From Guillardia theta CCMP2712 (taxonomy: Eukaryota; Protista; Cryptophyta), in the NCBI RefSeq assembly GCF_000315625.1, contig NW_005434638.1, positions 567,659 through 631,658 of the forward strand: DNA of 64,000 nucleotides, in the 5' to 3' direction. This document shows, piece after piece, positions 15,922 through 20,829 of this stretch. The notes below the pieces were generated by a model. It was not told the DNA's origin. It was given only the letters and a program-made list of their open reading frames with translations, and did no database searches. Made by a program: the position numbers and the translations under genes. Position 1 is the stretch's first letter. Every line of letters starts with the position of its first letter.

Positions 15922-18194
15922 TTACATCATGGCAGGATGAGAGGGCCGAAACTTTGTATTCCTGTTGAACTCGGCATCACGAAGAGGTGAAAACAAGCAG
16001 ATTTGCGCCACGAACCTCCTGGTTTCCAGGATGAGGTGACAGCAGGGGTAGCTCAGTCATGAGATTCATGGTCACGGATTCTACAAGTCTGTCATTTGCT
16101 CCATGTATGTGCTGGAAGAAAAAAGAGATGGTTTTGACAAGTTGACGATTCTCATGCCGTTTATGAAGAGTGCATCAGTGTGTTTGTAGAGGTTCATTTC
16201 TCGTGCTGCTATATCTCGATCGGTCGATCTACAGAATCAATACGGAACCCAGTCTCGTTCAACTCCCAGCGCAGAAACTCCTCCTCCCTTGCCGTCTCCT
16301 CCCGTGCACTTGCAATCTGCCAAGAACACCAGAGTTACCTCAAGATCCCTTCCTCCTCTCCATCCTTCATTTCACCCTCTTGGTCCACAGATTCCGTGCA
16401 TTTTCCGTTGTAGCCACGAGCTCCCAATCACCTCCATGAACCGTCCGCAGCTAAATAGGAAAGTGTTGGTTTCGCGCCGGAGGGCGGATGAGGTGGAGAA
16501 GTTGGACAGCATGTGGGAAGGAGGAGATTCAGAGCCGTGGAGGGAAGGAGGGTGCGAGGCGAGGAGTAAGAGGAAAGAAGAGCAGGGAGTCTTGATCCTG
16601 CACCTTGAAAGCGCAAGGGTTGATGGTCCTCTCGTAGTCTCTGAATCGCTCTCCACGAGACAAAAACTCCTCCCTCAGGTCATAGCGACGCTGGCAGATA
16701 GCATTCCTGTCCTCCCTGGATGCAGAGGAGGCTCAGAATGGCTGACTGGACCCTGTCTCCTCCCTCCCTTACTCTCTCAGAGTCGAGACCTGACAGAAAA
16801 CAATCTCTTCCATCTGTAGAGTCTCTTCACATCGCAGCAGCCGCGCGCCTTCGCGACTTCGGTGAGCTGGTCCCTGTCGTTTTGGAACATGTGAGATGCA
16901 AGAAGGGGCAGAAGAGCAAGGACTCGACCTTGACCAGCACCAGCTTCCAGCGAGATCCCTCCAAGTTTTCTGGAAGGAACGGGGCAAAATCGTCACTTCA
17001 ATTTGTGCGTGCAGAGGTTCATACACACCAGCAATCTCTCTGGGAATCAATTTGCTCTCCAGCGTGAGAGGCATCTGCACTGGCCTGGAACAGACACAAA
17101 GGAAGAGAGAGCGTTTGAGCTGAGTAGCAAAGAGTGGTTTTGGCATGCAAGACCTGAGCGCCATGAAGATTTCATCCCAACTTGTAGGATCGCCTTGCAC
17201 TCTCTCGAACAGTACTCCCTGCATCTGTAGACCTTGCAGGCCTGAAGACCCGAGCATGTCAGAGCTGCTGCGGAGAGATGAATTCTTACTTGTGGGAAGG
17301 GGCAGCGTTGGATCGAAGGCAACGCCGAACTGATAGGATCCAGGTGAAAGAGCCAAGGCGCGATCCGTCATGGGACTTGATTCCGGGGTTGCAGAAAACC
17401 CCTCCTGACTAGTGTTGATCTCCAACCTGGCTTTCTCCTTGTGAAGAGGTGAATCGTTTCGCTGGCTATCAAGATTGTCCTTGGACGTTCTGGTCTGCAA
17501 ATCTGTGAGAGGACGGCATGTCAATGAACCAAGAATTACTGAGGCTTCCTTCAGGTACAATTCCACATCCTTCGCTCCGCAGTCTATTGCCACATCCAAA
17601 GGGGAGAGACCATGGTGATCTTCGATGTAAGTTCGAGCCCCCAGTGAAACCAAAAGCTTTGCTATCCTGATAGAGCAGTCAGACAAGAGAGTTGTTCGGA
17701 ATCATTCGAAAACTTACGTGACTTTATCAAAGTCCGCACAGGACAATACGCAGAGATGCAGTGGGGTTTGGCCATGGATATTTTCTGATACAGCATGGCC
17801 TTAGGGAGGTTAAGTCCGCACATAGCTTCAGACTTACGGCAATTCACGTCAGCCTTTCTTTCAAGTACCAAGGCTTTAATCTCATTCGCACTTCCTCTCA
17901 CAGCAGCTGAATGAAGCGCCGTGTTACCGTGTCTCATCTGTTTACGAGATCCAATCAGACACATGGGCGTCAGCTAAGATACGCACTTTGATGGCTTCAA
18001 CGTTGCCGTTTATGCTCTCCGCCGGCTTATCCCTGGAAGATTCCTCACCTGAAGCAGAAGTGTTAGAACCATAAAATGTTCTTGTCTTGTTCTGAGTTCT
18101 TCTAAACGATTTCCCCTCTTCCCATCTAAACCTTCTCTCAAAGGCTCAAATTTTCACGGCTGGATACAACCTTGTTCTCTAATCGGCTCGCCAT
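15922..18194 (-). CDS. Ankyrin-repeat protein with coiled-coil C-terminal region, multi-exon
   Basis: HGNTALHSAAVRGSANEIKALVLERKADVN, GQTPLHLCV, IAKLLVSLGARTYIEDHHGLSPLDVAID; probable start MASRLENK. Ends approximate. Confidence 0.7.
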
Positions 18195-19032
18195 GCTACT
18201 ACCCTCTTCTATCTCCACCTCCGTCTCCCTCATCTACCCCTCCCCTTTGTTCCGCTCTCCTCCCTCTGCCCCCTCTCCCCCCTTCTCCTCTCCATGCTCG
18301 CAACCTCATCTCCTCCCCTGTTCCTCTCAAAACCTGTATGCTCTTACTGTTCCCCTCCTCCTCTCCCTCTCTCGCTTGCAACTTACATCCGCAGCCTCCC
18401 GACGCTACTGCGCCCATAGCGCGAAATTTGACTCGGGGAGGGGTAGTATGAGTAGTCGCACATCAAATGTACCGGTAGTGGATCGTTTTTCTCCGACGAT
18501 ACCTCATCCGATGTATACTTCGGATGGGAATAGGAGGGGTCACAAAGGGTCTCCTTCGGAGTTCCGTAGGGTGGGGTGTAGATTCAACTGGTGCCCCAGG
18601 GGGTAGCCAACAGATATCTCCGACAAATGACAGCTCTGTTTGAAGTGAGGAAGAGAGAGGAGGGAGGGAGAGAGGGAGGGAGGGAGGGAGGGAGGGAGGG
18701 AGGGAGGGAGGGAGGGAGGGAGTGGAGAAGAGTGAGGGAAGAAATAAGAATGAGGGCAGTTTTCTTTCCGGTCTTTTCGTCCTTCTATATTTTGCCTGTG
18801 GTGAACCTCGAGCAACAGAAATGTCACGAAAACTCACCCTTCTCCTATCTCTCCACACTTTTCTCTTCTCTTCATACTCCTCCCCCATACAGGAAAGTAA
18901 CAGTTCACAACCACAAACAGCATCAGAAGTGAAAGCATTGTATCTGAATACAAGGATCGCACCAGCCCCCCGCCCTCGCTGCGTCTTCCCTTCCTGCTCC
19001 TCTTCCTCGTACAGTCCATATCCCCCGACAAG

Positions 19033-20500
19033 TCATGCCGCTGGAGCGGAGGGGAATAGCGGCTCGACGCTGTGCCAGATGATGCCAAAGAAGGGACTCT
19101 TGGAGCTGGAGACGGAGATCAGAAGGGCTGAAGAGAGAGAGGGAGAAAGAGGAAGGGACCCTGCAGCATCATCTTCGTCTCTGCCGTCCTCAAAGGTTGT
19201 TGCATGATGTGAGGTTGAACTATCGTCTTGTCCGACTATCTCCGTCTCCTCCACGCGGAACAATCGCATAAACTTTCGAAGGGCTGGCAGCCTGCAGCAA
19301 GTGAGGAGGAGCTGAGGGAACAGGTGGAGCAAAGGCAGGTGGAGCAAGAGGAGCAAGAGGAGCAAGAGGAGCAAGAGGAGCAGGTGGCGGAGGGTGAGAA
19401 GGAAAACGCACGATGCATTCTTGCTTTCCCATACGATCAGCACGCCTGTCGGAGACAACCTCCGTATACAGCTTTCGGCCTCAAAATCAGCGATTCGAGC
19501 AGCTGGGAATCGACAACAACCCGACAAGGCTGGCTCTGACGTCGTTTGCTCCGCTGCTCTGCGATATGGCAAAATCAAACTTCCCACCCTCAGGTATGGT
19601 GAGCAAGAAAGTTACGACAAGTCGAAGGGTCCCATCGGCAGGATGCATGGTCCAGACCCTTCTGCCTGTAATTATCTTCTTCTCTGACGCTACACAAGGA
19701 TCAGCTCCTGCTCTTTTCTCTCATCCTCGCTCACCCCTGATGGTGCTGGCGACAAACTCTCCTCCTTGTCGATCCACGCGGAGAAAGAAGCTCTCGCTTC
19801 CTGCTCATCTCGTCACTTCCCGCTTTTTCTCATGAGGCCGCATGCTCGCACCCATCTCTGCTACCCACAGCCCCGGCAGCTGCGACATGTCGGCGACGTC
19901 GAGGTCTTCCTTCCCTGCTACGTGACGCGGAGCATGCGAGTTGGTTTCATTCGGAAGGATGGTGCCATCGTCACTCCCGCTCCCTCTTGCGTCCTCCTCC
20001 TGCCTTGTCTTCGCCTCTACCTCCTCCCTTCCTCCCCCCGCCTCTTCCTCCTCTTCCTCCTCCCCCTCCTGTTCCACCATCTCATCCTCGAACCAGGGGT
20101 CTCCTTCCCCTTCCTTATCTTGAGGGGTGAAGAACCAGCCGAGGTGGGCAAGGCAGCCCTTGCAGGCGACGCACTGCCATGCGAACCCCGGGTACCACGA
20201 GTGTCGAAGCACTCTCCTGCCGTAGATGAGGGAGTTGACAACCCTCCTCGTCCTCAAGACCTCGAACGACGAGCCGTGGGGGTTGACCAGCACCTGCGTC
20301 TGAACATGCTGATCGTTGCCGACCGGGCGGTTACGTCGCTCATGGGCGAAGGGAGAAGTCATGGCACGCATGCTGGTCGATGTTGTGACCTTCTTGCCGC
20401 ATTCGGCGCATGTGAGCCAGGCTCCAGGAGCAGCGAGCGGTCTGTGGGCAGAGCAGAGGAGGAGGAGGACAGAGAGTTGGCGCGACAGCCTTGCATGCAT
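19033..20500 (-). CDS. Signal-peptide-bearing cereblon-like CULT (thalidomide-binding) domain protein with a large insertion, multi-exon
   Basis: MHARLSRQLSVLLLLCSAHRPLAAPGAWLTCAECG...LVNPHGSSFEV...HSWYPGFAWQCVACKGCLAHLGWFF: both CxxC Zn pairs, NPHG and the three cage Trp residues are present. A closing strand-like FFGIIW lies near 19075-19095. Confidence 0.85.
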
Positions 20501-20829
20501 TAGAAGCGGAGAGCAGGTAGAGGGAAGGGGGAGGAGGACGGGAGCGAGCCCAGCAGGAGGCGGCGAAAGACAGTGGGAGGTGGGATGGGAGGCAGTCGGG
20601 GAGCTCTGCTGGAAGCGGACCAGGACAGGAAGCCGGTCAGCGGTAAGGCATGCTTCAGGTGCAGGGAGGGGAGAGGGGGAATTACAAGAGTTTGTCGGAA
20701 TTTTGTTGACGGAAGGGGTCGAGTCCATGGTCAGGGGGAGTTGACGGGGAGGGGACGGAGTTGACGGGGAGGGGAGGAGCTGGAGAAAGTAGGGGGGAGG
20801 AGAAGATCACAAGGTGTCTAGATATGTCT

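What the first reader, a model, noticed from the sequence alone, without database searches (positions are those of the whole stretch)
19033..20500. Secreted cereblon/CULT protein with an intact ligand cage and an extra domain apparently inserted into the fold
Seen: a signal-peptide-like N-terminus directly followed by a CULT domain with CAEC/CKGC, NPHG and HSWYPGFAW...HLGWFF. The usual closing F-x-G-L strand appears only at the C-terminus (SKSPFFGIIW), after an acidic linker and a spliced segment LPGLWVAEM..SESFFLRVDRQGGEFVASTIRG..IITGRRVW. Known: cereblon uses this tri-Trp cage to bind cyclic imides and uridine, and stand-alone and secreted CULT proteins exist. Inference: the insert resembles the FBXO31 cyclin-D1-binding/DUF3506 beta-barrel (GLW...A..I.G...G...W/F). 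That would make a two-module ER-luminal, periplastid or extracellular sensor with no LON/DDB1-binding part. I do not recognise this architecture.
Basis: partly seen in the sequence, partly recalled or inferred. Interest (0 to 1): 0.8.

Follow-up and report, generated by a model that had tools for sequence, protein, structure and literature searches.

The report
Secreted algal cereblon-like protein with insert
A cryptophyte alga encodes an apparently secreted relative of cereblon, the thalidomide target, whose drug-binding pocket is intact but which lacks the ubiquitin-ligase part and probably carries a second small barrel domain inside one of its loops, a layout not found in the databases or papers searched.

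Summary
The window is Guillardia theta. The minus-strand gene (annotated incompletely as GUITHDRAFT_108957) encodes a signal-peptide-like N-terminus, conserved in Hanusia phi, and a real CULT domain: E 1e-13 to cereblon, structural Z 12, all cage and zinc residues present, no LON/DDB1 part. Exon 1 stops before the fold's closing strand beta8. The only good beta8 candidate lies in the last exon (FFGII at 19092; rank 4 of 83,843 sites, chance about 0.04). It is reachable by a phase-consistent six-exon, 381-aa model. Between them sit an acidic linker and a beta-domain that ESM Atlas assigns to PF12014 (FBXO31/DUF3506; 0.90, TM 0.66). It is not a Pfam member, and the FBXO31 amide-pocket residues are replaced. 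No other protein with this layout appeared among 1.84 billion representatives. Best reading: a luminal or extracellular, ligase-free cyclic-imide/uridine binder with an inserted barrel. A plastid or periplastid location is unlikely. The scan had not noted this on other DNA. New variant of a known kind; interest 0.5.

The parts
20447..20500 (-). Signal-peptide-like N-terminus (aa 1 to about 18); start Met matches the Hanusia orthologue within one residue; missing from the public annotation
   Evidence: basic n-region, 8-residue h-region with KD 3.1 (Hanusia 2.7), small residues at -3/-1; helix 2-19 in the model. SignalP was not available.
20117..20416 (-). CULT domain, strands beta1-beta7, with two CxxC, NPxG and equivalents of CRBN H378, W380, W386, H397, W400 and F402 (Y384 is Phe, as in MsCI4-like variants of this aromatic position)
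   Evidence: (pLDDT 89)
19886..20116 (-). Acidic low-complexity linker (77 aa, 28 D/E) at the start of the beta7-beta8 loop; also present in Hanusia; one N-glycosylation sequon
19852..19885 (-). First strand of the second domain (L-x-G-x-W motif), end of exon 1; conserved in Hanusia
   Evidence: PSSM rank 3 of 92,347
19801..19851 (-). Intron 1 (51 nt, GT-AG, contains the 19805 stop)
   Evidence: agrees with the annotated protein P0001
19735..19800 (-). Exon 2: barrel strands 2-3
   Evidence: P0001; PSSM rank 8 of 69,570; 4th of 2,326 fragments against a bacterial PF12014 HMM
19690..19734 (-). Intron 2 (45 nt, GT-AG, CTGAT branch-like site)
   Evidence: P0001
19588..19689 (-). Exon 3: barrel strands 4-6; family motif TGDxxVPxG degenerate
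   Evidence: the annotation ends this exon at 19616
19536..19587 (-). Proposed intron 3 (3n+1). Acceptor uncertain: 19554, 19536, 19530 or 19503 all keep the frame. The annotation uses 19615-19559 instead
   Evidence: inference
19412..19535 (-). Proposed exon 4: strands resembling the C-terminal half of the PF12014 barrel
   Evidence: pattern only: rank 93 of 73,962, 0.8 expected by chance; hhalign not significant
19160..19291 (-). Proposed exon 5: last barrel strand-like segment plus short acidic linker
   Evidence: the only stop-free frame of six and the best codon score
19106..19159 (-). Proposed intron 5 (54 nt, in frame, 85% pyrimidine, CTGAT branch-like site)
19033..19105 (-). Proposed exon 6: closing strand beta8 of the CULT fold (F-x-G-I-I) and stop codon
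   Evidence: rank 4 of 83,843; best local site by 12 bits

Best explanation
A six-exon gene encodes a protein of about 381 aa that enters the secretory pathway (ER lumen, surface or medium). Its CULT domain binds zinc and forms a tri-tryptophan cage for a cyclic-imide or uracil-type ring: uridine, or the C-terminal aspartimide/aminoglutarimide left on damaged or self-cleaved proteins. A divergent PF12014-like beta-barrel hangs on acidic tethers from the beta7-beta8 loop and supplies a second, non-catalytic binding surface; the C-terminal strand returns to complete sheet 1. With no LON/DDB1 part and in the wrong compartment, it cannot be an E3 receptor. It most likely captures or holds a ligand and presents it to a partner through the barrel. 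Shown: the CULT fold, the cage residues, the missing beta8 in exon 1, and the absence of LON. Supported but indirect: secretion, PF12014-like fold, insertion topology (about 0.65). Inferred: ligand identity and adaptor role (about 0.4).
For: Cage intact and 35% identical to CRBN. Uridine binding is called universal for cereblon, and a ligand also present outside cells was argued for (PMC4449219; PMC4287342). Cyclic-imide degrons: PMC11974815. The signal peptide is conserved in Hanusia. beta8 is an edge strand next to beta1, linked by a crossover loop away from the cage (PMC4287342). Other CULTs carry 76-164 aa acidic inserts in exactly this loop and then resume with F-x-G-L. beta8 PSSM hit. 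Phase-consistent GT-AG model. PF12014 assignment. Eleven RNA-like runs hold 58-66% of the region's words, compatible with the long model (57-69%) and a little above the short one (45-60%).
Against: No read or transcript shows introns 3-5. The public gene model ends at 19487 without beta8. The Hanusia record stops at the intron-1 position, so it cannot confirm anything downstream. The barrel's second half has only chance-level sequence support. My single-sequence model of the barrel half was poor (pLDDT 50) and matched nothing. Word shares are a weak test. No ligand data exist for any secreted CULT in the papers read.
Confidence: 0.45

Rival explanations
1. Tandem rather than inserted: the annotated model is right at the 3' end (stop at 19487), giving a secreted CULT without beta8 followed by a half barrel; FFGII is a coincidence in non-coding or antisense DNA.
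For: Public annotation P0001. Open frames also exist on the plus strand at 18893-19204 and 19228-19539. Codon scores for exons 4 and 6 are ambiguous.
Against: It leaves both domains incomplete. The annotated last exon models as a low-confidence helix or coil. The beta8 match has chance about 0.04 and starts right after a canonical acceptor. The plus-strand frames have no family match and look like antisense of pyrimidine-rich introns. The beta8 Phe is at least 90% conserved in homologues.
Confidence: 0.17
2. Dual reader of damaged C-termini: CULT binds the C-terminal cyclic imide and the barrel binds a C-terminal amide as FBXO31 does (an amide is one hydrolysis product of the imide; own knowledge), giving secretory-pathway quality control.
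For: The two folds are those of the known readers of C-terminal imides and amides (PMC11821526). PF12014 assignment.
Against: By manual alignment to FBXO31, Y309 is Met, D334 is Ser and T343 is Val; only I337 is kept. Y309A, T343V and D334N each abolish amide binding. The G. theta F-box paralogue keeps the motifs, this gene does not.
Confidence: 0.08
3. Insertion real, but the barrel is a degenerate passenger (spacer or stabiliser) and the protein works simply as a stand-alone secreted CULT.
For: The loop tolerates long disordered inserts. Five of the family's six invariant loop-motif residues (K, G, D, V, P) are lost. The layout is restricted to two sister genera.
Against: Barrel strand 1 is conserved between Guillardia and Hanusia while the linker drifts. 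The beta pattern is retained over several exons.
Confidence: 0.22
4. Membrane-anchored form: in-frame 'intron 4' is retained as a transmembrane helix, making a type-I receptor with luminal CULT and barrel and a cytosolic tail.
For: The 120-nt segment is stop-free and in frame, with a KD19 maximum of 3.15.
Against: It is an 81% pyrimidine simple repeat bounded by GT-AG. Retention would put beta8 and the last barrel strand across the membrane from their domains.
Confidence: 0.06

Closest known systems
Secreted animal CULT proteins (group II of Lupas et al. 2015, PMC4287342)
   Same: Signal peptide directly followed by CULT, no LON; top-scoring homologues (coral and caddisfly 'cereblon-like'); closing strand of the F-x-G-I/L-I type.
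   Different: They consist of CULT alone. They form a clade (98/89) that excludes the cryptophyte pair in the careful tree, although an AU test does not reject joining them (p 0.38).
Oomycete secreted CULT plus carbohydrate-binding domain (PMC4287342)
   Same: Protist, signal peptide, CULT plus a second binding domain.
   Different: Their second domain is a b.64 carbohydrate-binding module placed after CULT; here it is PF12014-like and apparently inside the fold.
Cereblon (CRBN) and bacterial MsCI4
   Same: Fold (Z 11-12, rmsd 2.1-2.4), zinc site, NPxG, tri-Trp cage.
   Different: No LON or DDB1-binding region; secretory signal; insert in the beta7-beta8 loop. G. theta has a separate locus with the WPxWxxxxYD motif and a CULT exon, probably its canonical cereblon.
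PF12014 Cyclin_D1_bind / DUF3506 barrel (FBXO31, EXECUTER1, stand-alone Verrucomicrobiota proteins)
   Same: L-x-G-x-W start, strand spacing, Atlas features 0.90 and TM 0.66.
   Different: Below every HMM threshold; TGDxxVPxG motif and FBXO31 pocket residues replaced; no F-box; secretory context.

Membership tests
CULT domain family | Significant sequence similarity to cereblon CULT | tested here: met
   E 1e-13
CULT domain family | Two CxxC zinc motifs and NPxG at the hairpin tip | tested here: met
   CAEC, CKGC, NPHG; Hanusia has NPRG
CULT domain family | Three cage tryptophans plus H378/H397/F402 equivalents | tested here: met
   alignment
CULT domain family | beta-tent fold including closing strand beta8 | tested here: inconclusive
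   beta1-7 modelled; beta8 candidate only in proposed exon 6; pairing not modelled
CULT domain family | Binds thalidomide or uridine | not testable with these tools
   needs an assay
Cereblon proper (CRL4 receptor) | LON domain with DDB1-binding connector | tested here: not met
   CULT starts 28 residues after Met; no LON hit
Secreted animal CULT group | N-terminal signal sequence | tested here: met
   heuristic only; conserved in Hanusia
Secreted animal CULT group | Protein consists of CULT alone | tested here: not met
   second domain present
Secreted animal CULT group | Phylogenetic nesting in the group | tested here: inconclusive
   outside in the ML tree; AU p 0.38
PF12014 / DUF3506 | Pfam HMM score above the gathering cut-off | tested here: not met
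   custom HMM E 0.036
PF12014 / DUF3506 | K-x-T/S-G-D-x-x-V-P-x-G motif | tested here: not met
   invariant in 16 members; here only the last Gly is kept
PF12014 / DUF3506 | Same barrel fold | tested here: inconclusive
   Atlas TM 0.66 over 68 residues and feature score 0.90; own model uninformative
FBXO31-type C-terminal amide reader | Pocket residues Y309, D334, I337, T343 | tested here: not met
   Met, Ser, Ile, Val by manual alignment
Plastid/periplastid bipartite-targeted proteins | Transit peptide after the signal peptide; +1 Phe for the stroma (ASAFAP, PMC4329603) | tested here: not met
   no +1 Phe and at most about 10 residues before beta1 in both species

The most novel reading that the evidence does not exclude
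A ligase-independent, secretory-pathway reader of chemically damaged protein C-termini that nests an FBXO31-like barrel inside a cereblon domain. The imide and its partner signal would be read by one polypeptide and coupled through the beta7-beta8 loop, which folds only on ligand binding in MsCI4 (PMC4449219).
Probability: 0.1. Interest if true: 0.85.

Novelty: new variant of a known kind. Interest (0 to 1): 0.5.

Why it matters
The physiological ligand of ligase-free CULT proteins (bacterial and secreted) is an open question. A naturally two-domain secreted CULT gives a handle: the barrel's partner may reveal what the cage is for. If the insertion holds, a whole folded domain is tolerated in the beta7-beta8 loop, which bears on beta-tent evolution and on making cereblon-based binders or biosensors. 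The analysis also corrects a public gene model that lacks the signal peptide, the first zinc motif and probably three exons. Limits: it is seen in only two sister cryptophyte genera, and no function is shown.

Tried and rejected
As the operators required, the joined six-exon protein was neither built for search nor folded; everything was done exon by exon or with the stored protein P0001. My early idea that FFGII is the antisense of a plus-strand gene was dropped. Word search with the barrel found only P0001. Metagenome scans found no relatives. Contig look-ups were blank. No paralogue of the barrel or exon 4 exists in the genome. P0081, which matched the barrel, is an unrelated repeat protein. 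hhalign to FBXO31-like and bacterial alignments was not significant. The Atlas gave nothing for exon 4 alone. Single-sequence folding of the barrel half and three fold searches were uninformative. The upstream in-frame ATG at 20728 was rejected as the start because the Hanusia protein begins at the 20500 equivalent. A bacterial origin by gene transfer is not established: the tree is unresolved.

Full report
Source and gene. The region belongs to Guillardia theta CCMP2712: exon 1 is 99% identical to GUITHDRAFT_108957 (P0001, 243 aa), and the only close relative is a 204-aa Hanusia phi protein, P0002, at 55%. The gene is on the minus strand. The annotation starts at an internal Met, losing the signal peptide and the first CxxC; the Hanusia protein starts at the equivalent of ATG 20500. 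Both N-termini have a basic n-region, a hydrophobic core (KD 3.1 and 2.7) and plausible cleavage sites near residue 16-18 (heuristic; SignalP was not available). The first CULT strand follows within about ten residues and there is no +1 Phe, so bipartite plastid or periplastid targeting (PMC4329603) is unlikely.

CULT domain. It matches human cereblon at E 1e-13, with N-P-H, H378, W380, W386, H397, W400 and F402 equivalents in place. An AlphaFold model of exon 1 with 44 homologues has pLDDT 89. It superposes on MsCI4 (Z 12.0, residues 19-106) and CRBN (Z 11.9, residues 318-408), well above Mis18, Yippee and MsrB. The alignment ends before the F-x-G-L strand, which is at least 90% conserved in homologues. 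There is no LON domain. A separate locus with the DDB1-binding motif and a CULT exon is probably the alga's canonical cereblon.

Closing strand. In the beta-tent fold the last strand is the edge strand of sheet 1, beside beta1, reached by a loop over the top (PMC4287342). Among 150 homologues this loop is usually 5-25 residues, but several carry acidic inserts of 76-164 residues before resuming with F-x-G-L; none of the ten checked has a folded domain there. A profile from 115 homologues ranks the site at 19098 fourth of 83,843 in the window. It is first of 841 downstream minus-strand sites by 12 bits, about 0.04 expected by chance, though its score (8.7) is below typical true sites (median 22, self-included). 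The site begins just after a 54-nt, 85% pyrimidine GT-AG segment. A six-exon model (introns 19851-19801, 19734-19690, 19587-19536, 19411-19292, 19159-19106) is phase-consistent and stop-free and gives 381 aa. Introns 1-2 agree with the annotation; introns 3-5 are my inference, and the intron-3 acceptor is uncertain.

RNA evidence. Eleven RNA-like runs from five studies hold 58-66% of the region's words, so the locus is probably expressed. The long model predicts 57-69% and the annotated one 45-60% for plausible ends, which is a weak preference only.

Second domain. ESM Atlas places P0001 residues 160-243 with PF12014: score 0.90, 177 shared features, all ten best named hits in that family, and TM 0.66 to a 99-aa bacterial member. 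I collected about 50 stand-alone bacterial members, mostly Verrucomicrobiota, and five cryptophyte FBXO31-like proteins. Block profiles rank the end of exon 1 third of 92,347 and exon 2 eighth of 69,570, in the right order. Exon 4 resembles the last strand pair only at chance level. Whole-domain HMM and hhalign scores are marginal (E 0.02-0.04), and Pfam does not hit. The family's invariant K, G, D, V and P of the TGDxxVPxG loop are lost. Numbering FBXO31, Y309, D334, I337 and T343 correspond to Met, Ser, Ile and Val; Y309A, T343V and D334N abolish amide binding (PMC11821526). So it is probably a remote PF12014-fold barrel, not a family member and not an FBXO31-type reader.

Distribution and origin. 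A profile search of 1.84 billion representatives returned only the two cryptophyte proteins above E 1e-30 apart from one repeat protein, and no hit among the best 150 combined CULT with the barrel. Weaker orthologues could lie below that list. In a 53-sequence tree, animal-type secreted CULTs (98/89) and most cereblons (96/94) form clades; the cryptophyte pair sits on a long branch among stand-alone, bacterial-like CULTs, unresolved. An AU test does not reject joining it to the secreted group (p 0.38). Lupas et al. list bacterial, animal secreted, oomycete and kinetoplastid architectures but not this one, and paper searches found no description.

Mechanism. Shown: fold, cage and zinc residues, no ligase-binding part. 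Inferred from family knowledge: the cage binds a uracil or glutarimide-type ring (uridine binding is shared by bacterial and animal CULTs, PMC4449219; C-terminal cyclic imides are the CRBN degron, PMC11974815). Inferred: in the lumen or outside the cell the protein captures such a ligand, and the tethered barrel engages a partner. The beta7-beta8 loop is one of three regions that order only on ligand binding in MsCI4, so coupling is conceivable, but linkers of about 75 and 30 residues make tight allostery doubtful. I put the insertion topology at about 0.65 and the full mechanism at 0.45; rivals are listed separately.

Verdict. Its most striking feature depends on three unverified introns, and the FBXO31 analogy is structural at best. 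Interest 0.5.

Noticed in passing
L003:1492-2829 (G000:C22): F-box plus PF12014 protein, an FBXO31-like receptor with the GxYG and TGDPNVP pocket motifs intact and a Cys-rich insert; orthologues in Hanusia and Baffinella. Suggests C-terminal amide surveillance may exist in cryptophytes.
   Followed up: partly
L002:66-1710 (G000:C43): Probable canonical cereblon of G. theta (WPxW..YD motif and a CULT exon).
   Followed up: partly
L008-L062: Stand-alone PF12014 barrels of about 100 aa are widespread in Verrucomicrobiota, with the FBXO31 pocket Tyr, Asp and Thr positions largely conserved; function apparently unstudied. One ends a 1,113-aa open frame in a Deinococcales genome (L030).
   Followed up: partly
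P0003: 1,737-aa Heliothis virescens protein annotated as cereblon with 22 CULT-like matches; a tandem array or an assembly artefact.
   Followed up: no
P0042: 327-aa protein with two complete tandem CULT domains.
   Followed up: no
window 17665-17964 (-): Neighbouring ankyrin-repeat gene downstream on the same strand.
   Followed up: partly
window 17991-19030: Possible unassigned plus-strand spliced gene between the ankyrin gene and the CULT gene; no Pfam match for its open frames.
   Followed up: partly
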